Below are positions 1 to 55,104 of a DNA stretch of 64,000 nt, piece after piece. Below the pieces are notes generated by a model. That model saw only the letters and a program-made list of their open reading frames with translations. It had not been told where the DNA came from and ran no database searches. Each line of letters begins with the position of its first letter. Within the stretch, counting starts at the first letter, position 1. The stretch is from Mytilus californianus (lineage: Eukaryota): contig NW_026262734.1 in the NCBI RefSeq assembly GCF_021869535.1, positions 103,912,001-103,976,000 on the forward strand. Direction: 5' to 3'. The position numbers were made by a program, and so were the translations under genes.

Positions 1-28
1 AAATGCATATATTTCTGAATTGTAATTC
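1..28 (-). CDS. MRPL44: mL44 coding exon 3 (partial, runs off window)
   Basis: Acceptor ttacttttaag|G at 28; TG|G AAT TAC AAT TCA GAA ATA TAT GCA TTT = WNYNSEIYAF. Confidence 0.85.
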
Positions 29-478
29 CTTAAAAGTAATATATTGCAAAAAGTCATTAATGATTAATTTAAAAGTTGTAATTGTTTTTTCTTCTTATTC
101 TATAAAATATGACATTGGCAAATTTATGGTCCATTATCTGTAAATATTACATGGCCTTTTTACCAGCAAAAAAAAATGGCCCACTCCTATTTTAGGACCT
201 ACAAGAACACTGTAAAATTTATAAATCAATTTAGCAGGTTTCCTATCACTTGTTTAAAATACCTCTGCAATTTTTCTTCTGAAAACATGATTATTTTGGA
301 AATGAAGGAAATTTCATAAATGTATTAAATATGCAATATTGATTTTGAAAGGCCTAACTTCAAACTCTTCCTTGCATAACATTATTTCCTGTTGGTCACA
401 GTTTCATGAGCATAAGCAGTCATGTCTGCAATAGCGACTCCTAGAGCTAGATCAATTAAGCTGGGTAAAGTTGTGTAA

Positions 479-745
479 ATAGATATAAGAAGATGTGGTA
501 TGAGTGCCAATGAAACAACTCTCTATCCAAGTCAAAATTTATAAAAGTAAACAGTTATAGGTCAAAGTACGGCCTTCAACACGGACCCTTGGCTCACACC
601 AAACAGCAAACTATAAAGGGCCCCAAAAATTACTAGTGTAAAACTATTCAAACGGGAAAACCAACGGTCTAATCTATATAAAAAACAAGAAACGAGAAAC
701 ATTATGAACCACATCAACAAACGACAACTACTGAACATCAAATGC
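479..745 (+). repeat. Abundant interspersed repeat (agatataagaagatgtggtatgagtgccaatgagacaactctcc family)
   Basis: Near-identical copies at 9858-10036 (+) and 28790-29085 (-); diverged copies near 20730, 50185 and 56360. Confidence 0.8.
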
Positions 746-1052
746 CTTTTACAGATGATGTTCATTAAGTAATATACAATTATGACACTGTACTGGTACA
801 TATAATACCATGAAAACTTAAGCCTTATTATTTCGTGTTGCTCAGTCTTAAGTTTTCTATATGGGGTTTTGTTGACCTGATTTTCTTTTTTTCTTTTTGT
901 GTTTTTTTGCCATGACATTATCAGTTTCTCTTTGACTTATGAATTTTAAATTTCCTCTTTGTGTCTTCTGCCCCTCACCAAATTGAATACTTTTGTATGC
1001 TTATTAGAGATTGGCATGAGACGAAAATTAAAATCTACAGTAAAAATATTAC

Positions 1053-1176
1053 CAGCATCCTGATTCTGATGGATGGAGCTCAGGTTCTGGTCCAGCTTTG
1101 ATTCGTCTTTTATATAACTCTCTGAGCAAAGGTTGATATTTTCTGGAATTATTTAAACCTCTTCTTACCATGCATC
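1053..1176 (-). CDS. MRPL44: mL44 coding exon 2
   Basis: Acceptor tttgtattcaag, donor TG|gtaata; encodes (G)CMVRRGLNNSRKYQPLLRELYKRRIKAGPEPELHPSESGC(W). Phases fit both neighbours. Confidence 0.8.
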
Positions 1177-1714
1177 CTTGAATACAAATCATCATTACAA
1201 TTAAAAATCAAAATAATGTATTTTTTAATATAATAACTTTTTTACAAATTTGAGTTAATTCCCCTAATTTTCGAAATCTGTTGCTATACACTTACCATGT
1301 TTACAAGTAGAAACAATCTTTCATATTTTGGCCATGCTTGTCTGTCCTTCATGAAGTTAAACTTAAAAGTCAGAGGACTCGAATTTGTCCCTTGCAATCA
1401 TCTTTTTTTCAAACAATGTGAGCAGAGGGGTTTCAAAAATTAGCCAAATTAAAATGGATTACTATTTATCATGTTTATCAGTGTTTACCTGTTGAAAGCA
1501 TGTATGGTATACAGACATTCCTGTTCTAAAGCATAAAGACAATCATGACGATTGGGGTTTTGAAACTGTAGCGAGGTACTCAAAAAAACAAGGTTGCTCA
1601 TTTATCATGTTTAATAATAGCAATATTTCATATCTCAATAGAAAATGATAAAATAAATCCAGTTTGTAAAATTATGATTACTAAATTTGGTCTTTTAAAT
1701 AACAATGAAATAAT

Positions 1715-3546
1715 CAGTCAGGGGAATTACTGAAATAAGTGATTTATAAACTCACTTATTTAAGTACACAAATGCAGCAAATTTGAAATTCTGTGATTTT
1801 GTAGTTTTACCAAAATTTTAAACATACAGGTTTAGATTATATCTTATTATTAGTAAAATTGAAACTAGAGGCTCTCAAGAGCCTGTGTCGCTCACCTGTA
1901 TTTACTGATGCTTTGGAATTCATGTAAAATAAGGTTGAAATCATAATAAATAGTATTAGATATTAGATATTATAATGATATCTAAGATAATCACAAAAAA
2001 CTGCAAAACTTTTGTAAAATTACTAACTCAGGGGCAGCAACCCAACAACGGGTTGTCGGATTCAGGGCAGATAAATCTTAATCTGATGAACATTTTTGCC
2101 ACCTGTCAGATTTGCTCTAAATGCTATAGTTTCAGAGATATAAACCAAAAACTGCATTTTACCCCTATGTTCTATTTTTAACCAAGTCGGCCATGATGGT
2201 TGGAAGGCGGGGTCATGGGACAAATTTTTGAAACTAAATGCCCTAATAATGATTATGGCCAAGTATGGTTAAATTTGTCTCAGTAGTTTCAGAGAAGAAG
2301 ATTTTTGTAAAAGACTACAAAAATTTACAAAAAATTGTTAAAAATTGACAATTAAGGGCAATAACTCCTAAAGGGGTCGACTGACAATTTTGGTCATGAC
2401 AACTTATTTGTAGATCTTACTTTGCTGAACATTATTGCTGTTTACAGTTTATCTCTATCTATAATAATAATCAAGATAATTACCAAAAACTGCAAAATTT
2501 CCTTAAAATTACCAATTCAGGGGCAGCAACCCAACAACAGGTTGTCAGATTTGTCTGAAAATTTCAGGGCAGATAGATCTTGACCTGACAATCAGTTTTA
2601 CCCTATGTCAGATTTACTCTAAATGCTTTGGTTTCAGAGATATAAGCCAAAATCTACATTTTACCCCTATGTTCTATTTTTAGCCATGGCGGCCATCTTG
2701 GTTGGTTGGTGGGATCATCGGACACATTTTTTAAACTAGATACCCTAATGATGATTATGGCCAAGTTTGGTTAAATTTGGCAAAGTGGTTTCAGAGGAGA
2801 AGATTTTTGTAAAAAGCTAATGACGACGACGATGGACGACGGACGCCAAGTGATGAGAAAAGCTCACTTGGCCCTCTGGGCCAGGTGAGCTAATAAAAAA
2901 TGAACCTTTTGCTTCTTTTAAGTAGCAAGGTTTATGCCTATGATGCAATCATTCTGCTGTAAATTCTATATTTATTGAAAAATGCTATAATGAAGGCTTT
3001 ACACAATGAACTAATACTTTCTTAACAGATTTTTCCCAGCAGTGGGCGTATTTTTCCTATAAAATTCAAGGTTTCATCTTACCGATTATGTAATAAAATT
3101 TTACTGTTCGCGATCAAAATTTTACTATTTCAGGGGTGTTGAAATAAGTGGGGATATTAGAATAATAACATGAATAATACTAAAAGAAGTGATTTTTTGA
3201 AAGAAAAGAGAGGTATGATACTTAAACAAGTGATTTTCATGTCATTATCCCAGATTCAGAATTTGAACAGGGTCATCACCTGACATGACCAGTCATCCTA
3301 TAAACACAGACATGACAGATGTTGGTTTTGATAATTATAACAACATAATTTGTCCCTGGATCATTAGTATTGTTATTTAAAGCTACAATAAAATTAAATC
3401 ACTTAGTCTAGTGATTTATTTGTACTACTTAAATAGGTGATTATTAAAGAAAGACAACTCTTATTTCCAACATTTTCTGTTTTGTCTTTTTCTGTTACTT
3501 GAATCAGTGATTTAGAAATAATTCATTTAAGTAATTCCCTTGACTG
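1715..3546. mobile_element. Non-autonomous TIR element (CAGTCA[AG]GGG family) carrying a nested HINE
   Basis: TIRs cagtcaggggaattact / agtaattcccttgactg; flanking direct repeat ATAAT at 1710-1714 and 3547-3551. Confidence 0.75.
1864..2893 (+). mobile_element. Helentron-like non-autonomous element (HINE family A), copy 1
   Basis: 5' actagaggctct..gtcgctcacc, internal tandem units, (gac)n microsatellite, 3' hairpin gctcacttggccc..gggccaggtgagc. The same structure occurs at 17398 and 36823. Confidence 0.75.
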
Positions 3547-4120
3547 ATAATTCTCATTTAATCAGCTAATTAAAAATGCCAAAACAGCTGCAAAATTCTG
3601 TAACATTGAAAAATTCTAATTTCATTAAACTTTCTTTCAAAATGACTGGAATGGGCAATTTCCAAGATTTAGACTTGCTGCCCATTTTTCTGCCCATTTT
3701 GCTGCCCAAGAAGAGAAAAACATGTTGCTATGTGCTGATATCTGGTAGAATTTGGAGACTATTCTACAATTCATAGGTTGGTTGCTGAATGTTAATCAGA
3801 AAAGCAGAAAATTATAATGCCACCTACTACTACTATGGTAGTCTGGGCATAAACAAAAAATCATTTAAGGAAAAATCTTTAATTGGGAATCCATTGACAA
3901 TTCTCATCTTTTGATTCACTGGTAGACCTTGTTGTGAATCACAGTGATAATCATTTCTGGTTTTTACAATGTTGCTCTTTCAAATGTCCTTCTGTCATAT
4001 AGTTTTCAAGAAACTGAGAAATACAAAAAAAATGGGTAAAATTCATCATCTAAACTAAAGAGAAGTTACTCCTCTCAGGAGTTGATATCCAATGTTTATA
4101 TTGCAGATCATGTCTAGAGA

Positions 4121-4262
4121 CACGTGGAGCAGGATCTGCCTCCCCTTCCTGAGCACCTGAGATCACCCCTGGATTTTGGTGAGGTTCGTGTTGCTTAGTC
4201 TTTATTTTCTTATGTTATTATTTTGCATGTTTTGTCTTTTTCTTGTATGTGCATTTTTGCTG
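4121..4262 (+). repeat. Interspersed repeat (gagcaggatctgc..cacctgagatcaccccc family)
   Basis: Related copies at about 25978-26185, 51616-51790 and 63385-63520. Confidence 0.75.
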
Positions 4263-4270
4263 TGGCGTTG

Positions 4271-5222
4271 CAGTCTTCACACTTAACTTTTCAACCTACA
4301 AGTCAGTAGGACTTGTGGTTCATAAATGTTTACAAGTCCCCAGAAAATTCTACAAGACCACACAAATTATTATCACCGCTGAGCAGCATGAAGCGCTGCG
4401 AACCAGCTAGGAGGGTCTGGGGGCATGCCCCCCCAGAAAATTTTTGAAAAATTAGATGCAAAATCCTGCATTCTGAGAGCTTTGAGTGTCATGTTTTGAA
4501 GATAAATTTAATAGGAATAACATTGACAATTGGAGAAAAAAGTAAAAAGTAGCTGTTATAATAATTTTATTCTCTTAAAAATTTAGAAAGAAGGTGCCTT
4601 CTCTAGAATGCTGTAACATTTTTTAGCCTCTGATGGTTCAGCTGCAGGCTTCTCATATTTAGAGCAATAAATTTGTGACTCTTATTCTTCTCGTGAATTT
4701 TAATAGTATCCAGTTTAAAGTTGTCACTACCTGGGGTCACAAACTGTGAATCCATTTTATGTTCTGTGCACCATGAACAGAACATTTTGTTTTTCAACTC
4801 ATACATCAACCACGGACTTCCTTCTAACCAACTGGAAAGGAACTGACGCAACCATGTAGCGTTGTACTTTCTCTTCCTTACATTTTCATCGGCGGGGGAC
4901 TAAAACGGCTTCCCCGGACGAGCTCCACCAGTACATTGCCGAAGAAACATTTTGGGAATATAAGTTAGGGGGAAGGAAACCAATGATCTGTCATTTCATA
5001 CAATGTCTCTATCCAGTATTAATCGCAATACGTTTAATTCATGTGAAAAAGCGCAAAATAGAAACCGATTTATTGGTATCACTAATTACCAAAGACGCAA
5101 AGAGCGTATCAACTACCGAAAAATCTACAAGCCCAGTCGGACTTTTGAACAACAAATTTGACAAGTCCGCGGCCGATTTTACTGGCCAGGACCGTCGGAC
5201 TTGTGGCTAAATTCGAAGACTG
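4271..5222 (-). mobile_element. Internally deleted hAT-like DNA transposon in MRPL44 intron 1
   Basis: TIR CAGTCTTC..GAAGACTG, flanking duplication GCGTTG (4265-4270 / 5223-5228). The internal ORF 4603-4851 has a TTF-type zinc finger pattern (F..SW....PWL.Y....MFC..C...F..GS.NF......HE....H). Confidence 0.75.
4603..4851 (-). pseudogene. hAT transposase N-terminal TTF-type zinc-finger fragment
   Basis: MRQFLSSWLEGSPWLMYELKNKMFCSWCTEHKMDSQFVTPGSDNFKLDTIKIHEKNKSH; no catalytic domain follows. Confidence 0.7.
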
Positions 5223-5909
5223 GCGTTGACAGTTCTTTTTTTATGTCCCATCTCTCTTTAAAATTTTACCTGACTGTAAAATTCAGTTTTATTGCTCAAT
5301 AGAGCTTATGTTTTCTGTGTACTTATATTTTATCTTAACCATGTTAACATAAACATGATAAAGCTAGCAAACATTTGAACTTTTTTTAAACAGAATTCAT
5401 TATTTGGGTATTTTGATGGGTTATTCAATTCATTGTTCAGTGCTAAAAATGTAGGGTTTTAATTTGTGTTACAGCTACTGACTATTTTTAAATAATAAAT
5501 GAATTTGTGTACATGTATTACTGTTGCAAAAATGAAAATATATTGATAAGTAGAACATGTAGTACCGGTGCTATTTTAAATAATTTTTAATAGAGAATAA
5601 CCCTCTTTCACAGCTAATATCTGTCTCATATGATAAATTGAGACATTTACCTCATTGTCTTTGGCAAATACAATACAATACAATACAATGCAATATTTTT
5701 ATTGTCAATCAAGGACGTTCTAAGAGAGCAGTATAATTACAAATAATTTATTACAATGATTATTATTAATTCTTAATGATATATAATGTGGTTTGACCCG
5801 ACCCTCCCCCTTTTATCTTATGAATCACCAAACAGACATTACATGTTTAAATTCTCTATTACGTTACATGCAAAATGATATATTATTAAAACATAATTAT
5901 ATGTTACAC

Positions 5910-6003
5910 CTTGTAAACATGTTAGATGGGGAGAAATGCCACTATTATTACAAAATCGTGATAAAATTCTGCAGTGGCTGATCAATCGACAGGAGGCTGC
6001 CAT
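5910..6003 (-). CDS. MRPL44: mL44 coding exon 1 (mitochondrial presequence)
   Basis: aaaaATGGCAGCC start, donor CAAG|gtgtaa, phase 1 matches the exon at 1176; MAASCRLISHCRILSRF looks like a targeting peptide. Confidence 0.78.
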
Positions 6004-6125
6004 TTTTATTTAAACTGGTACCTATTTCTTATTTTAAAATGAAGAGCCAAGTTAAAGAATAATTTCAGTTTAGGGTATCAGTAGAAAAAGTAGAGGTCGA
6101 AGCAAGTATGAAATGAAAGAATAAA
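6004..6125. promoter_or_regulatory. Putative shared bidirectional promoter / 5' UTRs of MRPL44 and MRPL57
   Basis: Only 122 bp separate the two divergent ATGs; AAAATGGC (YY1-like) overlaps the MRPL44 start. Confidence 0.55.
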
Positions 6126-6196
6126 ATGAGGCTTACTCGAGTTGTATTTGGATTTTATAAGAGATACAAGAAAGTTCCTGGTTTACTCTATGCAGG
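6126..6196 (+). CDS. MRPL57: mL63 coding exon 1
   Basis: ATG AGG CTT ACT CGA... MRLTRVVFGFYKRYKKVPGLLYA(G); donor GG|gtaata, phase 2. Confidence 0.82.
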
Positions 6197-7060
6197 GTAA
6201 TAGAATATTTTAGATAAGAGACCGATACTTGTGCCTTTTATATAAATATGCATCATTATAAAACATTGAAAAATGAGACATTCCCAAAAAAGTGAAAATT
6301 AAAAGTACCTGCACAAAAAGGTTTAAAATCGAAACAGAATGCAGAGGCGCATGTTCTAGGACTAAGATTGCATTTTATATTAAATATAGACATTCCTACC
6401 ATGTATGCTTTTTCAATTCATTTCCTATAGTTACATTTTTATGCTAAGACCATGAAATTTTTTTTTATAAAGTTTTTCTTTTATATACCATGTTTACTTG
6501 TGCACTTCTTTGTGGAAGCATGTGTCATTACGAATGTAACATTTCATTTTTATATGAAGGTTAATTTCTTGAATGGTCATGCGTATCAGTGTCTGTAGGC
6601 TTAAAATTGGTATATTTGTGTTAATAATAATAAAATATTGTTTATACTAGTGTGTTATTTTATTAATATGAATCTGTTTTATAGTCACTTAATTAACATG
6701 ATTAACACAATGATCATGTTTCACAGCAAAAGTTGTTTACTTGTCGCACTCTACTGTGACATTATATAGTTTGTGAGTGAGTCTGCAAGCATGTGAGCAT
6801 GCTTCACCATGTTCACTGTGTGATGCCTTTTCACATTCATATCTCATAATTTTTTTTAACAGAAAACATGAACTTCTAGTGGTGTATATCATAATGTTTT
6901 TTTCTATCTGTAAACAATGGTAAACGTCACTTGTTCTTCATTGTTATAACGTACAGTAATGAGACTTTTTTCTCTGGAACATTTTTTTCCAAATATAGTT
7001 TTGATCACTTACATGACTTAACAATGCTTAACATGCTTAAATTTTTTCATATTTTTTTAG

Positions 7061-7172
7061 TAAAAACAAAATAATACCAAAGATTTACCCTCAACACAAG
7101 GAGAGAGCTCTAAAATGGTTCTTGATCAATGAAGAAAATGAAAGGATTTTGTCTGAACCATACCTGACAGAA
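7061..7172 (+). CDS. MRPL57: mL63 coding exon 2
   Basis: Acceptor catatttttttag, donor GAA|gtaagt; KNKIIPKIYPQHKERALKWFLINEENERILSEPYLTE. Confidence 0.87.
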
Positions 7173-7978
7173 GTAAGTAGCAGTTTTCTTAAACATTTTA
7201 TTTAATATAAAGGGGGAAATTGTATAATAGCTGTCAAATTCATGTTCATTAATTTGACTCAAAGTCTAATATTTGATTTATTATAACATATCAAAACGTA
7301 CATCCAAATTACAAAAAGTAAAAAAAATAAAAACCAATTAACAATGCATGAACTCGATGATATACTAATTATCTAACGAGATGACCTCTGAATACTGCTG
7401 ACAGTCATATAACTCGATATAAACATAAATATAAATAGATAGCTACCACTTGCAATTGGATTTTTCTAGGTCTGTTTGATTTCCTGTATAGGTTAAAAAA
7501 TAAGTTAATCATTGTTTTTACCTGTATGAGAATGCTTTTTTGTAGATTGAATCAGTCAACGTAATATGGTTCACCCTTGTTTCATTTTCAATGTTTACAT
7601 TACTTTCCTTTTAATAGCTGAACATGTCTAGTACCATGAGTACATGCATAATCCATCTCCAGCTATATATATAGGGGTTATATTAAAGATCACATGAACA
7701 TGATGAATACAGATTCACATGAGGTGGAATTATTCATTTGCAAGTCAATAATATATCAGCAATATGTTTGAGCTTATTTTGACAAATTTTGGCCAAACTA
7801 ACTGCTTATAATGAAGTATTATTTCAAAATTCCACTTTTATTAATACTTGAAACAAACAAATTCATATTTTAGATTTTTCTCTAGATCATAGCTTATGCC
7901 CCTTTATTCATGTTAATGTAAATTCAAATATTTTTGCTAATTTCTGCATTTGCATTTTTCAAACTCAAAGGTAACTGT

Positions 7979-8645
7979 CAGTCAGGGGTACTACTTATAC
8001 AAATTATTTTTATTTACTTGAAGAAGTAAATAATAATATACTTATATAAGTAAATTTGTTATATTCATATTTTCTTATTAGGTTTGAATAATCTCCCCTT
8101 AATTTTCTCAAAAAATTTACTTGTATAAGTAATTTTTTTTACTATCCCTAAAATTCTCAAGTTTTGGGATGTAAAAACATGCCTTAAACAATTTTTCTCT
8201 GGTTAGCTCATAATTTTTTATTAGAGTTCAATGTTTCATCTCATTAATTCATCAAAGAAACTAATTGCGCAAAGATCTTGAGTAATTGCGCAAGGCCTTC
8301 AAAAATTGCCCCTTCGAGGCTTGTAAATGAGCAGTGTTTTGAATTAAACAGACAAATGAGATTTTCATTGTCCATGAAATTACACTTAAATGATAAGTAA
8401 AGACATCAGTGCAAAGGACAGACAATTAAAAATTCTATTAGAGCAAAGAAGTGTTGAGAAATTCAAGAAAAGAAGGTAGTATGATTTTTTACTTGTATAA
8501 GTAAAAAAATCTGAATGTCTAAGGGACAAAACTAAGCCATTAGAATAATCAACCGATACAAGTAAATAAAATACACTTGTATAAGTATATTAATATATTC
8601 TTCAAGTAAACAAAAAATAACTTGAACAAGTAGTACCACTGACTG
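7979..8645. mobile_element. Non-autonomous TIR element (CAGTCA[AG]GGG family) in MRPL57 intron 2
   Basis: Long imperfect TIRs cagtcaggggtactactt / aagtagtaccactgactg; direct repeat ACTGT at 7974-7978 and 8646-8650. Confidence 0.8.
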
Positions 8646-9857
8646 ACTGTATTGTATTTTAGCTTGGACTATTATAAACATAGGTTTTACTCTTGAGTGT
8701 GACAAATTAGTTTATCAAGTGATGCAGAATGTTGTAAACAGAATTTGTAACAGTAGAAATAAAGGTTTATTTAGGCCAAGCCCAAAATACAAAACAGTCA
8801 TCTGTATTCTACATTGTAATATAAAATAAACATGATAAGCAAATCATACAATTTTAGTTGTACATGCATTAATTATCAGTAATATAAACTAGATAAGTAC
8901 TTTGACCATAAATGATAAGCAGATGCATGAAATGTAATGTATAGCCACCACAAAAATGTAAGTTAGTCAGAATGGGGGACCTAGATCAGTGGATATGAGA
9001 CATTAGATCTAGACCTATTGTGAAGAAAAAAGGAAACACTGAAAAAGCATGGCAGTCAATTTGCCATCATTTACAATATGCTTGTGAAAATGATTACCTG
9101 GGTATACAGTTGACTCTTGTTATCTACAAACCGACGGAGCAGTGATACAATTTCAAGTCAACTGAAAATAATGTTTGGAAGATAGTTTCTTCGTCTCTTT
9201 CTGGAATCATTCCTCATCAGGTCATCAATATAATATTAGTTCATTTGTTGATCTCTTCCTGAATAATCGGTCAATGCATACTGTATATACTGTGTATTCA
9301 GAAATTATTGTGAGGTTTTTATTATTGCGAATAATGGGACTGTGTGAGTGACACAATAATAAGAACTCACATTCTTATATCTGATACATATATATATATA
9401 TATATATGTATATCGGTATGCAAATTTTCCAGAAATCACAATAATTGATCTTGCATTTTTGTCCTTTTTTCAAAAATCCCAATAATAGATGGACACAATA
9501 ATTTCTGATTTTTCAGTTAAACATGTTGTAGATGCATTATTAAGCGTGGTGTACTATTTAATGTGGATTTTGTGGGTATACTTGAACCTCAAATTAAAAT
9601 GCTTAATGAAATATAAATTTCCTATAGGCTTGTATGCAGAATTTTCAAAAATCAAGAAATCAAGTATCCACAAAAAATCGGTATTCACACAAAAATAAAT
9701 GAATCCACCGTATACTGATAAGGAACAATGCATCAGAATTTTGGGGACTGTACTGTAAATAGGATATAACAACTCCAACATACGTCCTCGTGTTATATCC
9801 TATATGTAGGTTGATTATGTAAGCATTTTGTCATAAATATCAGTGATGCACTAATAT

Positions 9858-10036
9858 ATAGATATAAGAAGATGTGGTATGAGTGCCAATGAGACAACTC
9901 TCCATTCAAGTCACAATTTGTAAAAGTAAACCATTATAGGTCAAAGTACGGCCTTCAACACGGAGCCTTGGCTCACACTGAACAGCAAGCTATAAAGGGC
10001 CCCAAAAATGACTAGTGTAAAACCATTCAAACAGGA
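9858..10036 (+). repeat. Truncated copy of the agatataagaagatgtgg interspersed repeat
   Basis: Matches 479-660 at high identity. Confidence 0.75.
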
Positions 10037-10152
10037 TTATTATGACTATATTTAAAACTTTTTTTCTAAATTTTGAGCATAATAATAAGGCAGTATACTC
10101 ATTTATAAAGTATTGATATCTTAAAACTCATATCTTAAATTTATACTTTCAG

Positions 10153-10320
10153 AAAGAGGATGAGGGCCACATGGAAGCATTAGGATTTACAAATGAGGCA
10201 AGAATTCTTGAAGCAGTGGAGAAAGATGCAATAGAAAGATGGAATAAACCAAAAGACAGAAGAATTCATTATCTCGAAGAACATTATAAACATTTAAATA
10301 CCAGAAAATCGTGGGAATGA
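10153..10320 (+). CDS. MRPL57: mL63 coding exon 3 (terminal)
   Basis: Acceptor ttatactttcag; KEDEGHMEALGFTNEARILEAVEKDAIERWNKPKDRRIHYLEEHYKHLNTRKSWE then TGA. Confidence 0.87.
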   Translation, partial: KEDEGHMEALGFTNEARILEAVEKDAIERWNKPKDRRIHYLEEHYKHLNTRKSWE

Positions 10321-10343: not shown

Positions 10344-10349
10344 AATAAA
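10344..10349 (+). terminator. Polyadenylation signal AATAAA of MRPL57
   Basis: AATAAA 23 nt after the stop codon, followed by T-rich sequence. Confidence 0.55.
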
Positions 10350-12750: not shown

Positions 12751-13398
12751 CTGTGTTGGTTAGAAGTTTGTCCAAGAGGTTGTTTTAGTGCTGTGTTGGT
12801 TAGAAGTTTGTCCAAGAGGTTGTTTTAGTACTGTGTTGGTTAGAAGTTTGTCCAAGAGGTTGTTTCAGTGCTGTGTTGGTTAGAAGTTTGTTGAAGAGGT
12901 TGTTTTAGTGCTGTGTTGGTTAGAAGTGTGTCCAAGAGGTTGTTTTCGTGCTGTGTTGCTTAGAAGTGTGTCCAAGAGGTTGTTTTAGTGCTTTGTTGGT
13001 TAGAAGTTTGTCCAAGAGGTTATTTTAGTGCTATGTTGGTAAGATGTTTGTCCAAGAGGCTGTATTAGTGCTGTGTTGGTTAGAAGTTTGTCCAAGAGGT
13101 TGTTTTAGTGCTGTGTTGATTAGAAGTGTGTCCAAGAGGTTGTTTTGGTGCTGTGTTGCTTAGAAGTGTGTCAAAGAGGTTGTTTTAGTGCTTTGTTGGT
13201 TAAAAGTGTGTCCAAGAGGTTGTTTTAGTGCTGTGTTGGTTAGAAGTTTGTCCAAGAGGTTGTTTTAGTGCTGTGTTGGTTAGAAGTGTGTCCAAGAGGT
13301 TGTTTTAGTGCTGTGTTGGTTAGAAGTGTGTCCAAGAGGTTTTTTTAGTGCTGTGTTGGTTAGAAGTTTGTCCAAGAGGTTGTTTTAGTGCTGTGTTG
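12751..13398. repeat. 40-bp minisatellite, 16 copies
   Basis: Unit ctgtgttggttagaagtttgtccaagaggttgttttagtg in exact 40-bp register from 12751 to 13390, plus a partial unit. Confidence 0.95.
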
Positions 13399-38000: not shown

Positions 38001-38405
38001 AAAAAAAGATTCAGTGTCAAATTAAGATATCATTTTTCTATTTTTTAAATCCATAATAATACAATGTAAGTGACTCTGAAATCACTTGTTTAAGTAATAA
38101 ATCTGATGTGAATATATAAAATAAAATCTATTGAAAGACTTGTCATTAACACCAAAATCTCCAAATATCAAAATAAACTGTTGACACAGAGATATGTCTC
38201 GCATGGATTTAACTTGAATCTCCTCTTAAAATGTACAAGATCATGATGATGTATACACAAAGTTAGAAAATTGTGAATAGTCATTATGGTCATCAGCACT
38301 AAATCTGCTGAAAAGGACTAATCCCCCCCAAAAAAGTATCCATGCAAATAAGTTAGTTTACAGTATTCAAATTCTACCATGTCTACAGTCACTGTATAGT
38401 TTTAC

Positions 38406-41165
38406 CTGTTGTTCATGTAAGGTTCTATAACCAGGTACAGGGCCTGATCTTGGAGGGGTTGATATAGCATCTGTTGAAGTTGAAATCTCTCTCTCATCAC
38501 TGTCATGACTGTAAGATCCAGTCATATTCCTGCTCTGTGAGGACAAGTTTCCATATCTGGCATACAGTTGTGACAATAGAGCAGTATCTGTTTCTGACAT
38601 CCTCAATGGATTGGTAGAATGTGAATGATCCATACTAACTTCGGGTGCAGAAGCATTTGCAAAATTTTGATGTAAATTTTGTGAAAGAATGTTTCTTTGG
38701 TATCTTACCATAACACTAGGATCTGATAAATCAATTTCTCCTTGTGTATTGTATAGATTTCTTGATGGTGAATGGTCCATGTGTTGCATTCTACTCCCTG
38801 GCTGTATTCCATGCCTTAAATCACTTTCATTGTTCAGTTTTTGTAAATTATCTTCATTTCTTAATTGTCGTCTGCTTGTTTCATAATCATGATCATCATG
38901 ATGTTTGAACAAAACATGCTGGTTTGCTGGAACACTTGATGTTCCTGCATCTTCGTCTGGGTACTTTGATTGTGAAAGATTAACATGAGCATAACCAATG
39001 TTTTCTGTCACATTTGGATTACTGGCTGTTTGATCTCTTGTTATATTATTTGCCTTATACTGGTCCCTGGGAGATGTAACAGGGCTCTGCCTTAAATCGT
39101 ATGAATTTTTCATTATTCTAAATGAGCTCTCTCCATTTCTTTGTGGAGAACGATTATTTTCAATTCCAAAAATTTCCCTAGAGTTGTTCATAGTTTGTTG
39201 GGGTGTACTAGAACGTTTGCAAAAATTTTCACTTGGGTCACCTTGACCTTGAAGTATTTCTTTCTGCTCCTGACTTTTATCCTTACATGTTAATATTTCA
39301 CCAGTATCAATGATTATACATTCTTTTTCACGGGGAGATAACTTACGACAAACTTTATAATTTCCATAGTTAATTGGATAGTCTGGATAATTTGGAAGAG
39401 GATCAAGTTTTGGCATTCCTTGACTTCCACAAGCCTCTTCACTTTGTTGTCGTTCATAGATGTTTTTCTTTTGAGGTTCAACTGATGATTGGATATCTGC
39501 CTCATTTTCAGAAGACAAATGTTCATCTCCATTTTCTACGGTTCTTGAAGCATTTTGTTCTGTTTCAATTGTATCGTTTAAACTAATGTGCTCAGAAATT
39601 TCTTTAATATCTTCCTGAATCTGATCTGTTACCCGAGTTGCTTCTGCTTCTTTTCTATCAATAACCATTGAAACTGCAATTTCCATAGCAACTGGATTTG
39701 CTGTAATTTCAGGCTCTCCTCTCCTGTTCCCATTCTCATCAAATTCAACTTCCTGTCCATCTGCACTTTCCTCACCAGAGGGCAGGCATTCTTCTCTTGT
39801 CAATGAATCAACAACTGTTTGAGACCATTCTTTTCTTTCATCTATTTCAATCTCATCTTTGTCATCTGGATGTTTAATTTGACTTTCATCTACCTCTGTT
39901 GTCAACCTTTCTTTTAATACTGATTCTTCATCATTTTCAAGTCCTTCATCAGAAGAAAAGGAAGTATCATTATTAAAAGTAGACACAGCTGTATCGAGGA
40001 CATGTTTGACGATTATATTTGCCAAATTACTGGTGTCAGTAGCACTGCTTTTATCCTCATCTTCTTCTTCATTTTCCCTTTCCTCTGGTTTAAATTCAGT
40101 TTCCATGACAATTATCTCATTCTCAGGTTTTTCTAAATTCGGATCTTTTTCAGAATGCACAGTTTGATCTTCTAAGTTATCTTTTTTTATTTCTTCTGTT
40201 TTTATATTTTGCACATTTCCCGATGAGCTATCAAAGGAATCAAAATGTTCTTCCGATTTAATGCTATTTCTTTCATCGATCTGATTAGTTTCACTTCCAG
40301 AATCTACATGGTCAGAAACAGTTTTCTGCTTCACCATCAAAAGTTCTTCTGATATTTCCTGAAAATTTCCATTTTCATCATCATTAACACTGCTTTCCTC
40401 TGAACTAACTATTTCTTCCTTAGATTTAGTTTCATCTTTTACAGCACCAATGTCTGTGCTTGCTTTAGTTTCAGTTGTTGTAATCTTTTCATCTACTATA
40501 AATTCTTTTTTATCATCATCCTCATCAGTAGTGATTTCAACATTTACATACTGATGATATTCTGTGACTGCCTTAACCATGCTAACAGACTGCTGACTTG
40601 TTTCATCACCTTCCATTTCTTCTTTCTGCTTACTATCATGACTATCACTCATTTCATCCACAATTCCTATCTCATCTTTTTTAACTTCACTTGTGACAAT
40701 ATTTTGCCCATTATCAGAGCCAAATGTTTTACTGTCACAGCTTTCAGATTCAGATTGAATCTCTTCCTTTATGGATTCAGTTATTTCTGAACCTTCATCT
40801 TCAAAAGTGTCATTCTCATAATCATTTTCCTGACTCTCAGTTCTGATGTCTTCAGAATGCTCAGAGTCTCCTTGAATCTCAGTTTTAATGTCTTTGATAG
40901 GCTCAGTGTCTCCTTGAACCCCAATTCTTATGTCTTTAGAAGGATCAGTGTCTCCTTGAACCTCAGTTCTTATGTCTTTAAAAAGCCCAGTATCTCCTTG
41001 ATCCTCAGTTTTAATTTCTTTAGGGGACTCACTGTCTTGCTGAATTTCAGTCCTGTCTTTAGAGGACTCAGTGTCTTGCTCTGTTGTCTTTGTTGTTTTG
41101 GAAGTGTCTCCGATTGCACCAATATCTTCTACCTGATTAGATTCTTCCAATGGAGGAGACTCCAT
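38406..41165 (-). CDS. MPHOSPH9: MPHOSPH9 coding exon 1 (2760 nt, acidic low-complexity)
   Basis: Acceptor tatttccag at 41170, ATG 4 nt into the exon, donor CAG|gtaaaa, phase 0 into exon 2; 920 codons open. Confidence 0.82.
40835..41092 (-). repeat. Coding 42-bp (14-aa) tandem repeat, about 6 copies
   Basis: Peptide units such as KDIRTEVQGDTDPS, KDIRIGVQGDTEPI and KDIKTEIQGDSEHS. Confidence 0.85.
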
Positions 41166-54150: not shown

Positions 54151-54588
54151 ACCCATCATCATAATCCTGTACATGAATATATGCTGTAAAATACATGTGG
54201 AGAGCTACCATATAACTTGAGTCCAGCCATATTGAGATTATAATATTATTTTTTCTTTTTCATTAGGATGTTGTATTGATAATATCAACAGCACTGTGAG
54301 TATTTTACACCTTTTCTACTGCATCAATTATCAGAAGAACTTTCACAAAATAACTTTTGTTATGAACTTATGACAGTGAAATTTCTGATATATCCACAAG
54401 TAAATTGAATGTTTGACAATGATTCAGAAGTTTAACACATAGAAAGTGTGACTCTCTTTACTGTACAAACTACATGAGTAAAGAAGAACTTCTGCCCGTT
54501 AAGATGGTACTGTTCACCTCTTGTAGAATATATGTATGTCTGATGATTTGCAAAAATATTGAATGCTGATGTTTCAGAATTGAAAAAA

Positions 54589-54978
54589 ATGTCATTATTA
54601 TCAGAATTTTGTGTACGATTGTTCAGAAGTGTAACCAACTATAGTCGCTTGACATATAAACTAACTTCTTCTCATACCGTAAGAAATTATAATTCGAACT
54701 TATGGATGACTAACAGAATTAAGTTTTATTCACAACTCTGTGGACCAGTTACTAAGAATCTTGAAAAAAGTTTAACAAACATTAAGTTCCTGGCTTGTGA
54801 AAGTCAATTTTATCAGACAAGAAGATTGATCTCGCGAAAACAATACAAGTTTCCAGATCTATTGGAAAGTGATTTACAAGAACAGTTTGTTAGAGGTGGA
54901 GGACCCGGGGGTCAAGCAGTGGCAAAGACAAATAACTGTTGTGTGCTGAAACATTTACCTACTGGAATTGTTGTAAGG
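54589..54978 (+). CDS. MTRFR: MTRFR coding exon 1 (presequence and GGQ domain)
   Basis: Acceptor gtttcag at 54577, aaaaATG at 54589, donor AGG|gtaagt. Confidence 0.9.
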
Positions 54979-55104
54979 GTAAGTTAGTTGTCTTTTCTTT
55001 TTTTTTTAATTGTTAGGTTACTGTCTCTTTGGTGCATCCATGAAATGTTAAGCAAACAAGGATCAATGCATCTTCATACCATGGAACATTACGCACACAA
55101 AAAT

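What the first reader, a model, noticed from the sequence alone, without database searches (positions are those of the whole stretch)
5910..6196. Two mitoribosomal large-subunit genes head-to-head with start codons 122 bp apart
Seen: the MRPL44 ATG is at 6003 (-) and the MRPL57 ATG at 6126 (+), leaving 122 bp for both 5' UTRs and the promoter in an otherwise TE-bloated genome. This gap has no TE insertion although both genes' introns are full of them. Known: mL44 and mL63 are both stoichiometric mt-LSU subunits and are unlinked in human (as I recall, chr2 and chr13). Inferred: a minimal bidirectional promoter or overlapping 5' UTRs that enforce 1:1 co-expression.
Basis: partly seen in the sequence, partly recalled or inferred. 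Interest (0 to 1): 0.75.

Follow-up and report, generated by a model that had tools for sequence, protein, structure and literature searches.

The report
Head-to-head mussel mitoribosomal gene pair
Two genes for proteins of the mitochondrial ribosome (MRPL44 and MRPL57) sit back to back in the California mussel, are transcribed outward from a shared 122-base spacer, and lie the same way in a limpet; this is a tidy, old example of a well-known gene arrangement, not a new kind of thing.

Summary
The window is Mytilus californianus (100% identical over 20,320 bases to GCA_021869535.1).

- **Plus gene.** ATG at 6126, three exons, 116 aa. The product is identical to RefSeq "ribosomal protein 63, mitochondrial-like". 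It matches Pfam MRP-63 at E 7.6e-15.
- **Minus gene.** ATG at 6003. The window holds exons 1 and 2 and the first 28 bases of exon 3. It is the 5' end of the public 351-aa gene call that carries the two mL44-specific Pfam domains.
- **Transcription.** Stranded RNA-seq shows divergent transcription that changes strand inside 5958-6154. It confirms both first-exon splice donors. RNA contig ends lie at 6002 and 6106. So both 5' ends probably lie in or at the edge of the 122-bp spacer, which acts as a compact, AT-rich, non-CpG-island bidirectional promoter.
- **Conservation.** The pair keeps the same orientation in M. galloprovincialis (122 bp), M. edulis (123 bp) and the limpet Lottia gigantea (304 bp), while the outer neighbours differ. 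In an unidentified compact-genome metazoan, MRPL44 instead follows a cullin gene.
- **Invariant block.** A 50-nt block (6079-6128) is identical across the Mytilus species (P about 0.005).

"Enforced 1:1 co-expression" and overlapping 5' UTRs are not shown. Verdict: real, already annotated, and a new member of a known kind (conserved divergent gene pair). Interest is modest.

The parts
1..28 (-). MRPL44 exon 3, first 28 bases only; the exon runs off the window start
   Evidence: Acceptor AG at 30-29. The reading W-NYNSEIYAF continues in L005 3902-3816. That exon hits Pfam PF22935 RM44_endonuclase at E 7.4e-9.
29..1052 (-). MRPL44 intron 2, containing a dispersed repeat at 485-685
   Evidence: Donor GT at 1052-1051 and acceptor AG at 30-29. 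The 485-685 segment and 9864-10036 match the same Mytilus segment.
1053..1176 (-). MRPL44 exon 2 (124 nt)
   Evidence: The loose ends of 35 RNA reads at 5909/5910 map to 1146-1175. Acceptor AG at 1178-1177. The peptide is 52% identical over 25 aa to the matching exon of the Lottia mL44 gene.
1177..5909 (-). MRPL44 intron 1 (4733 bp), rich in repeats and TE remains
   Evidence: High-copy depth at 3200-3593 and 3988-4381. The 1971-2896 segment is multi-copy in L003. A zf-C17orf113 ORF lies at 4606-4899.
5910..6003 (-). MRPL44 exon 1, coding part (ATG at 6003, 31 codons plus 1 nt)
   Evidence: RNA lies on the minus strand only. The NCBI coding sequence ends at this ATG. A 39-nt run at 5951-5989 is invariant among the Mytilus species.
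6004..6125 (.). 122-bp spacer: shared promoter region plus both short 5' leaders. 27% GC, one CpG.
   Evidence: The strand switch of RNA lies within bin 5958-6154. Spacer length is 122-123 bp in three Mytilus species.
6014..6024 (-). Mytilus-invariant block ACTGGTACCTA. On the minus strand it reads CCAGTT, an initiator-like motif with its A at 6016. This is the putative MRPL44 start site, giving a 13-nt leader (inferred).
   Evidence: Invariant columns. An RNA contig ends at 6002 and depth falls across the bin. The start site itself was not mapped.
6079..6128 (+). 50-nt block identical in M. californianus, M. galloprovincialis and M. edulis. It begins with CAGT (putative MRPL57 start site, A at 6080, inferred). 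It contains two micro-uORFs (ATG 6108 AAA TGA; ATG 6113 AAA GAA TAA).
   Evidence: It is the longest invariant run, P about 0.005 by column shuffling. An RNA contig starts at 6106/6107, so both upstream ATGs lie inside the assembled transcript.
6126..6196 (+). MRPL57 (mL63) exon 1, coding part
   Evidence: 56 spliced stranded reads join 6196 to 7061.
6197..7060 (+). MRPL57 intron 1 (GT..AG, 864 bp)
   Evidence: joints table.
7061..7172 (+). MRPL57 exon 2
   Evidence: This exon alone hits Pfam MRP-63 at E 7.5e-6.
7173..10152 (+). MRPL57 intron 2 (2980 bp), with repeats at 7337-7533, 7977-8588 and 9864-10036
   Evidence: 80 reads run on from 7172 into letters found at 10153-10182. Repeats.
10153..10320 (+). 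MRPL57 exon 3, coding part up to the TGA stop. AATAAA follows at 10344-10349.
   Evidence: The spliced product of 116 aa is identical to P0008 / XP_052075712.1.

Best explanation
This is the 5' junction of two real, expressed nuclear genes of Mytilus californianus: MRPL44 (mL44, minus strand) and MRPL57 (mL63, plus strand). They are arranged head to head.

Both are transcribed outward from the 122-bp AT-rich spacer between their start codons. The spacer is therefore a compact bidirectional promoter. It holds two closely spaced, oppositely oriented core promoters and two short leaders.

My inferred layout is as follows:
- An initiator-like CAGT on each strand, with its A at 6016 (minus strand) and at 6080 (plus strand), 64 bp apart. 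Each sits in a block that does not vary among Mytilus species.
- A very short MRPL44 leader of about 13 nt, with its ATG in a TISU/YY1-like context (AAAAATGGCAGCC).
- An MRPL57 leader of about 46 nt that is invariant and carries two tiny upstream ORFs.

The adjacency and orientation date at least to the common ancestor of bivalves and gastropods. The most likely reason it was kept is that a break between the genes would separate at least one of them from regulatory sequence it needs. That gives coordinated transcription, not fixed 1:1 output.

Shown: gene identities, splice structure, divergent transcription from within 5958-6154, and conservation in Mytilus and Lottia. Inferred: exact start sites, sharing of elements, and selection on the linkage.
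For: Identity of the window: bases 1-20320 are 100% identical, without gaps, to M. californianus JAKFGE010000008.1.

MRPL57:
- The spliced 116-aa product is identical to XP_052075712.1.
- It matches Pfam MRP-63 at E 7.6e-15 over profile positions 1-92 of 92.
- It aligns end to end with solved mL63 chains at E 3.4e-5.

MRPL44:
- The public gene call on the same DNA gives 351 aa with RM44_endonuclase and DSRM_MRPL44. Its coding sequence ends at window position 6003.
- Exon 3 hits RM44_endonuclase at E 7.4e-9.
- Exon 2 matches the corresponding Lottia mL44 exon.

Transcription:
- In run X17, first-mate-on-plus reads (minus-strand RNA) have depth 9.26 in bin 5761-5957, 5.57 in bin 5958-6154, and 0 to the right.
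- First-mate-on-minus reads (plus-strand RNA) have depth 0 to the left of 5958, then 13.6 and 12.7.
- 56 spliced reads cross MRPL57 intron 1, and 35 reads join MRPL44 exon 1 to exon 2.
- RNA contigs end at 6002 and start at 6106.

Conservation:
- Same pair and orientation in M. galloprovincialis, M. edulis and M. californianus, with gaps of 122-123 bp.
- Same pair and orientation in Lottia gigantea with a 304-bp gap, but with different outer neighbours.
- The first-intron positions and phases are the same in Lottia (one search compared).
- The 50-nt block 6079-6128 is invariant while the neighbouring exons are about 87% identical.
Against: - No start site was mapped at base resolution. The reads tool reported no pile-up of molecule ends (table 6), and contig ends are only lower bounds. 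The 197-bp bins cannot strictly exclude a small overlap of the two leaders.
- No element shared by both directions has been shown.
- No sequence words are shared between the mussel and Lottia spacers above chance.
- The Mytilus comparison is in effect two lineages: californianus against the edulis complex.
- In run X12 only MRPL57 was assembled, at depth 371.7 against none for MRPL44 exon 1. If real, this argues against tight coupling, although the tool warns that a hole in contigs proves nothing.
- In an unidentified metazoan (L006, L008, L012) MRPL44 lies downstream of a cullin gene. To my knowledge the two genes are on different chromosomes in human. So the linkage can be broken.
- The TISU match is partial: the base just before the ATG (position -1) is A in mussels, and position +4 is T in Lottia.
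Confidence: 0.75

Rival explanations
1. The two genes are real neighbours, but the adjacency is a neutral leftover. Two self-sufficient core promoters happen to lie back to back, nothing is shared, and the linkage has simply not yet been broken in Mytilus and Lottia.
For: - No motif is shared between the mussel and Lottia spacers.
- The left 75 nt of the spacer evolve about as fast as intron flanks: 75-81% identity against 78-83%.
- The linkage is absent in another metazoan and, to my knowledge, in human.
- Housekeeping genes would look co-expressed without any sharing.
Against: - Both outer neighbours differ between Lottia and Mytilus, yet this pair and its orientation survive.
- The spacing is tiny (122-304 bp), so almost any breakpoint would hit a promoter.
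- Irimia et al. 2012 (PMC3514665) found that anciently conserved pairs are enriched for exactly this 5'-5' layout with short spacers.
- The 50-nt invariant block is significant.
Confidence: 0.2
2. The 122-bp spacer is not the promoter. The true start sites lie elsewhere, in unannotated upstream non-coding exons, and the ATG-proximal exons are internal.
For: Start sites were not mapped at base resolution. Only about 6% of the raw-read run was sampled.
Against: - No spliced joint enters either first exon from outside.
- Strand-specific depth drops to zero beyond the shared bin on each side.
- Upstream of each ATG there is no AG acceptor used by any read.
- RNA contigs end at 6002 and 6106.
Confidence: 0.03
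3. The invariant 50-nt block is conserved for a reason unrelated to the promoter, for example a structured RNA or a small non-coding gene lying in the spacer.
For: The block is more conserved than the flanking coding sequence.
Against: - No Rfam family matches at E up to 1.
- The predicted fold is weak: -9.8 kcal/mol, z -1.65, and 13 of 200 shuffles fold as well.
- The block abuts the MRPL57 ATG, and its 3' part is present in the MRPL57 transcript contig.
Confidence: 0.02

Closest known systems
Mrps12 / Sarsm (Sars2) bidirectional promoter of mouse and human (PMC1802594)
   Same: Two genes of the mitochondrial translation apparatus are transcribed in opposite directions from a conserved shared region of under 200 bp.
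   Different: - The mammalian promoter works through an array of CCAAT boxes bound by NF-Y and lies in GC-rich DNA. The mussel spacer has no CCAAT box, is 27% GC and has one CpG.
- The partners differ. Here both are structural proteins of the same ribosomal subunit.
- The mammalian promoter is biased in direction, which shows that sharing does not give 1:1 output.
Conserved ancient microsyntenic pairs in 5'-5' orientation, e.g. HSPD1/HSPE1 (Irimia et al. 2012, PMC3514665)
   Same: An unrelated gene pair, functionally linked, divergent and with a very short spacer, whose orientation is kept over hundreds of millions of years while the surrounding gene order changes.
   Different: - HSPD1/HSPE1 is kept from fungi to human. 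MRPL44/MRPL57 is shown here only for Mytilus and Lottia, and it is broken in at least one other metazoan and, to my knowledge, in human.
- The pair is not mentioned in that paper's main text, and its supplements were not available.
[quoted passage not shown]
   Same: An ATG very close to the start site, in an AAnATGGC context, in a gene of mitochondrial and translation function. The human TISU set is enriched for these functions and has a median leader of 12 nt. The MRPL44 ATG context is AAAAATGGCAGCC in M. californianus and AAAAATGGCCGCC in M. galloprovincialis.
   Different: - The match to the core AAGATGG is only partial.
- The start site is unmapped.
- YY1 binding is untested.
- TISU was defined in mammals. 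This is a resemblance, not a membership.

Membership tests
mL63 / MRP-63 (Pfam PF14978) | Whole-protein match to the family profile above the curated cut-off | tested here: met
   P0008, which is identical to the window's spliced product, scores 55.6 bits against a cut-off of 27, at E 7.6e-15 over profile positions 1-92 of 92. Exon 2 alone scores 26.8 bits.
mL63 / MRP-63 (Pfam PF14978) | End-to-end similarity to mL63 chains seen in solved mitoribosomes, and about 100 aa in length | tested here: met
   116 aa. Residues 16-115 align to residues 11-101 of a 102-aa mL63 chain (9e9c_o) at E 3.4e-5. The pig and human chains 4v1a_t and 3j7y_o also match.
mL63 / MRP-63 (Pfam PF14978) | Physical presence in the mussel mitochondrial large subunit | not testable with these tools
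   Needs mitoribosome proteomics or cryo-EM from a mollusc.
mL44 (Pfam PF22935 RM44_endonuclase + PF22892 DSRM_MRPL44) | RNase III-like mL44 endonuclease domain followed by the mL44 double-stranded-RNA-binding domain | tested here: met
   The public gene call on DNA identical to the window gives a 351-aa product with both families. The same holds in M. galloprovincialis, M. edulis and Lottia. Only the first 9 codons of the first domain lie inside the window. The exon they open scores 36.2 bits against a cut-off of 27.
mL44 (Pfam PF22935 RM44_endonuclase + PF22892 DSRM_MRPL44) | The window's exons 1 and 2 belong to that gene | tested here: met
   RNA reads join exon 1 to exon 2. The coding sequence of the gene call ends at window position 6003. 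Exon 2 matches the Lottia mL44 exon. On their own, exons 1 and 2 hit nothing in Pfam or the PDB.
Bidirectional promoter (divergent gene pair) | Head-to-head genes with 5' ends less than 1 kb apart | tested here: met
   The ATGs are 122 bp apart. Both RNA 5' ends lie inside bin 5958-6154.
Bidirectional promoter (divergent gene pair) | Both directions transcribed from the spacer | tested here: met
   Strand-specific depth and spliced reads in run X17, and RNA contigs in runs X2 and X12.
Bidirectional promoter (divergent gene pair) | Cis-elements that act on both genes, and correlated expression | tested here: inconclusive
   Depth ratios (MRPL57 to MRPL44) are about 60 to 38 in X17 and 51 to 38.6 in X2. 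In X12 it is 371.7 to none. There is no tissue series and no reporter test.
Conserved ancient microsyntenic pair | Same adjacency and orientation in distant lineages while flanking gene order differs | tested here: met
   Mytilus (bivalve) and Lottia (gastropod) share the pair. The flanks differ: Glyco_hydro_2, ZNHIT3 and Metallophos genes in Lottia, against a 1833-1840-aa gene without a Pfam family in Mytilus.
Conserved ancient microsyntenic pair | Conservation across several phyla | tested here: inconclusive
   Only molluscs could be reached. One unidentified metazoan clade has a cullin gene followed by MRPL44 instead. The word-index searches found no mL63 outside molluscs, and a metagenome scan with mL63 was blank.
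TISU element | ATG 5-30 nt from the start site, inside the consensus, which has an AAGATGG core | tested here: inconclusive
   The context is AAAAATGGCAGCC, a partial match. The start site is not mapped. An RNA contig ends 1 nt short of the A of the ATG, which fits a very short leader but does not prove one.

The most novel reading that the evidence does not exclude
mL63 is a metazoan-only addition to the mitoribosome, whereas mL44 is older, dating to the opisthokonts (PMC6367999). The most novel reading not excluded by my evidence is that the MRPL44-MRPL57 linkage is ancestral to animals. On that reading, MRPL57 arose at, or was captured very early by, the divergent side of the MRPL44 promoter. 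Molluscs would then preserve the birthplace of a lineage-specific ribosomal protein gene, and other lineages would have lost the linkage later.
Probability: 0.06. Interest if true: 0.7.

Novelty: new member of a known kind. Interest (0 to 1): 0.35.

Why it matters
How cells match the supply of the roughly 80 nuclear-encoded mitoribosomal proteins is an open question. A divergent pair of two large-subunit proteins would be a small natural case of coupling hard-wired into gene order.

This case is useful for several reasons:
- It has been kept since the split of bivalves and gastropods.
- The regulatory fragment is very small (122 bp).
- The predictions are clear: two start sites, three invariant blocks and two micro-uORFs.
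- The promoter is AT-rich and not a CpG island, unlike the vertebrate bidirectional promoters on which the field is built.

The general phenomenon is nevertheless well known, and both genes are already annotated. The finding adds an example rather than a principle, unless a wider survey shows that the linkage is ancestral to animals.

Tried and rejected
- **Pfam and PDB searches with single short exons.** Mostly blank: both first exons, MRPL44 exon 2, MRPL57 exons 2 and 3 against the PDB. The weak mS26 hits for MRPL57 exon 3 are noise. The whole protein hits mL63.
- **Exhaustive phmmer with MRPL44 exon 2.** Returned two repetitive proteins and one 101-aa read-through fragment from a 1-kb metagenome contig. 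This gave no family information.
- **Word-index homologue searches for mL63.** Reached only Mytilus, one unnamed ENA cluster and Lottia. One search failed on an E-value limit.
- **Metagenome scan with mL63.** Nothing found.
- **Metagenome scan with an mL44 exon.** Gave only an unidentified compact-genome metazoan clade without the pairing. Its weak hits to my mL63 profile (E 0.5-1.6) lie antisense within a cullin gene and were rejected.
- **Shared words between the mussel and Lottia spacers.** At or below chance. A TATTTAAA near both MRPL44 ATGs is not conserved in M. galloprovincialis and was dismissed.
- **Known vertebrate motifs.** No CCAAT, NRF-1 or ETS/GABP site is conserved in the spacer. 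An ETS-like TTCCGG is present in M. galloprovincialis but not in M. californianus.
- **Bacterial promoter and terminator scan.** Irrelevant to a eukaryote and at chance level.
- **Rfam search and RNA folding of the invariant block.** Negative.
- **Earlier scan notes.** None exist for this place.
- **Irimia et al. 2012.** No mention of this pair in the main text, and no supplements were held.

Full report
**What is there**

The minus strand has an ATG whose A is at 6003. The plus strand has an ATG at 6126. Exactly 122 bases (6004-6125) lie between them, at 27% GC with a single CpG.

**Origin of the window**

Bases 1-20320 are 100% identical, without a gap, to a locus fetched from Mytilus californianus assembly GCA_021869535.1, record JAKFGE010000008.1. 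So the window is California mussel, and public gene calls can be read directly onto it.

**The plus gene is MRPL57 (mL63)**

- Stranded RNA-seq reads (run X17) cross a GT..AG intron at 6197-7060, with 56 reads starting at 39 places. They then run on from 7172 into letters that lie at 10153.
- This gives three coding exons: 6126-6196, 7061-7172 and 10153-10320. An AATAAA follows at 10344-10349.
- The spliced 116-aa product is identical to XP_052075712.1, named "ribosomal protein 63, mitochondrial-like".
- It matches Pfam MRP-63 over the whole profile at E 7.6e-15 and 55.6 bits, against a cut-off of 27.
- It aligns end to end with mL63 chains of solved mitoribosomes at E 3.4e-5.

**The minus gene is MRPL44 (mL44)**

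- Thirty-five RNA reads continue from the exon-1 donor into letters that lie at 1146-1175.
- This defines exon 2 as 1176-1053 and intron 1 as 4733 bp.
- Exon 3 begins at 28 and runs off the window start.
- On their own, exons 1 and 2 match nothing in Pfam or the PDB.
- The NCBI gene call on the identical DNA is a 351-aa product with RM44_endonuclase and DSRM_MRPL44. Its coding range ends at window position 6003.
- Exon 3 alone hits RM44_endonuclase at E 7.4e-9.
- Exon 2 is 52% identical to the matching exon of the Lottia mL44 gene.

So only about 80 of the 351 residues lie in the window, but the identity is secure.

**Transcription**

In the stranded run X17, the spliced reads of the plus-strand MRPL57 intron all have their first mate on the minus strand. 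This fixes the library's strand convention.

| Bin | Minus-strand RNA depth | Plus-strand RNA depth |
|---|---|---|
| 5761-5957 | 9.26 | 0 |
| 5958-6154 | 5.57 | 13.6 |
| 6155-6351 | 0 | 12.7 |

- Both 5' ends therefore lie inside 5958-6154.
- No joint brings an upstream exon into either gene.
- An RNA contig of MRPL44 ends at 6002. An RNA contig of MRPL57 starts at 6106/6107.
- From the depth in the shared bin I estimate 5' ends at roughly 6005-6020 and 6080-6106. This is an inference, because the tool found no pile-up of ends and my one reads call is spent.
- Overlapping leaders are thus unlikely but not strictly excluded.
- The MRPL57-to-MRPL44 depth ratio is about 60 to 38 in X17 and 51 to 38.6 in X2. 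In X12 only MRPL57 was assembled (371.7). Nothing here shows a fixed 1:1 output.

**Conservation**

| Species (locus) | Arrangement | ATG-to-ATG gap |
|---|---|---|
| M. galloprovincialis (L002) | head to head | 122 bp |
| M. edulis (L003) | head to head | 123 bp |
| M. californianus (L005) | head to head | 122 bp |
| Lottia gigantea (L004) | head to head | 304 bp |

- In Lottia, a 363-aa gene with RM44_endonuclase and DSRM_MRPL44 lies divergent to a 112-aa MRP-63 gene.
- The first-intron positions and phases of both genes are the same in Lottia as in the mussel.
- The outer neighbours differ. In Lottia they are Glyco_hydro_2 on one side and ZNHIT3 then Metallophos on the other. In Mytilus a 1833-1840-aa gene without any Pfam family lies downstream of MRPL57.
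- The pair therefore predates the bivalve-gastropod split and has outlived its surroundings.
- It is not universal. In contigs of an unidentified AT-rich, compact-genome metazoan (L006, L007, L008, L012), MRPL44 follows a cullin gene in tandem, and no mL63 lies upstream.
- To my knowledge the human genes are on chromosomes 2 and 13. PMC12141075 places vertebrate MRPL44 beside MFF and COL4A3.

**Inside the spacer**

- Between M. californianus and the edulis-complex species, the exons are about 87% identical. The left 75 nt of the spacer are 75-81% identical. The right 47 nt are 100% identical.
- With the ATG, the invariant run is 50 nt (6079-6128). It is the longest run in the alignment. A run this long arises in 0.5% of column shuffles.
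- This is in effect a comparison of two lineages.
- The run starts with CAGT, which is initiator-like. It holds two micro-uORFs (ATG 6108 AAA TGA; ATG 6113 AAA GAA TAA). Both upstream ATGs lie inside the assembled MRPL57 transcript contig.
- A second invariant block (6014-6024) reads CCAGTT on the minus strand. A start at 6016 would give MRPL44 a 13-nt leader.
- The MRPL44 ATG context, AAAAATGGCAGCC, partly resembles the TISU/YY1 element of mammalian short-leader genes. That element is enriched in mitochondrial and translation genes and goes with a median leader of 12 nt (PMC2518114).
- These start sites and the TISU resemblance are hypotheses.
- No word is shared with the Lottia spacer above chance. 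No Rfam family matches, and the fold of the block is unremarkable.

**Transposable elements**

- The introns do hold repeats. Very high contig depth is seen at 3200-3593, 3988-4381, 7337-7533 and 7928-8518.
- Intron segments match several or non-orthologous places in the Mytilus loci.
- A zf-C17orf113 ORF lies at 4606-4899.
- A 122-bp target staying clean is expected and carries no weight.

**Comparison with what is known**

- The arrangement works like a classical bidirectional promoter. The closest case is Mrps12/Sarsm in mouse and human. There, two mitochondrial-translation genes share under 200 bp, driven by CCAAT boxes and NF-Y, with a directional bias (PMC1802594).
- It also fits the 5'-5', short-spacer class of anciently conserved gene pairs described by Irimia et al. 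(PMC3514665), of which HSPD1/HSPE1 is the type example.
- It differs in being AT-rich and not a CpG island, in lacking CCAAT, NRF-1 or conserved ETS sites, and in joining two structural proteins of one ribosomal subunit.
- mL63 is a metazoan-only protein and mL44 an opisthokont one (PMC6367999). This leaves open, at low probability, that the linkage is ancestral to animals.

**Verdict**

The identities and the shared divergent promoter hold. Overlapping leaders and enforced 1:1 expression do not.
- Both genes are already annotated in RefSeq.
- What is new is the recognition of the pair and its conservation in a limpet: a new member of a known kind, of modest interest.

Noticed in passing
window 54559-54984 (+): An ORF with an RF-1/GGQ domain (Pfam E 6e-9). 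Its best solved relative is C12orf65/MTRFR, the mitochondrial rescue release factor (E 4.6e-14). This is a third mitochondrial-translation gene within the same 64 kb, probably by coincidence.
   Followed up: partly
window 38370-41165 (-), and from 17235 onward: A 932-aa ORF with no Pfam family, lying in a stretch of strong GC and AT skew. It is probably the large exon of the 1837-aa gene without any Pfam family that NCBI calls downstream of MRPL57 (L005 21110-24195). The same unnamed gene follows MRPL57 in M. galloprovincialis and M. edulis.
   Followed up: no
window 12751-13398: A tandem array with a period of about 40 bp, seen as a ladder of self-matches at 91-93% identity in the comparison with L005.
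   Followed up: no
window 4606-4899 (-): A 98-aa ORF with a zf-C17orf113 zinc finger (E 1e-15) inside MRPL44 intron 1, most likely a remnant of a mobile element.
   Followed up: partly
window 485-685 and 9864-10036: Two copies of one dispersed repeat, one in an intron of each gene of the pair. Both match a segment just downstream of MRPL57 in the Mytilus loci (L002 28961-29159, L003 16227-16425).
   Followed up: no
window 5951-5989 (-): A 39-nt run invariant among the Mytilus species, lying inside the MRPL44 presequence coding region and including synonymous sites (P about 0.04 by shuffling). It could be a downstream promoter or translation element, or chance.
   Followed up: partly
L006, L007, L008, L012 (metagenome contigs): An unidentified AT-rich metazoan with a compact genome and very short introns. 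There, MRPL44 starts about 110 bp after the stop of a cullin gene on the same strand. Its mL44 N-terminus (RRIEAGPEPERFRSSLINW) closely resembles the mollusc one.
   Followed up: partly
window 7061: RNA contigs of two runs carry A or C where the window has T, at the first base of MRPL57 exon 2. This is a synonymous third-position polymorphism in Gly24.
   Followed up: no
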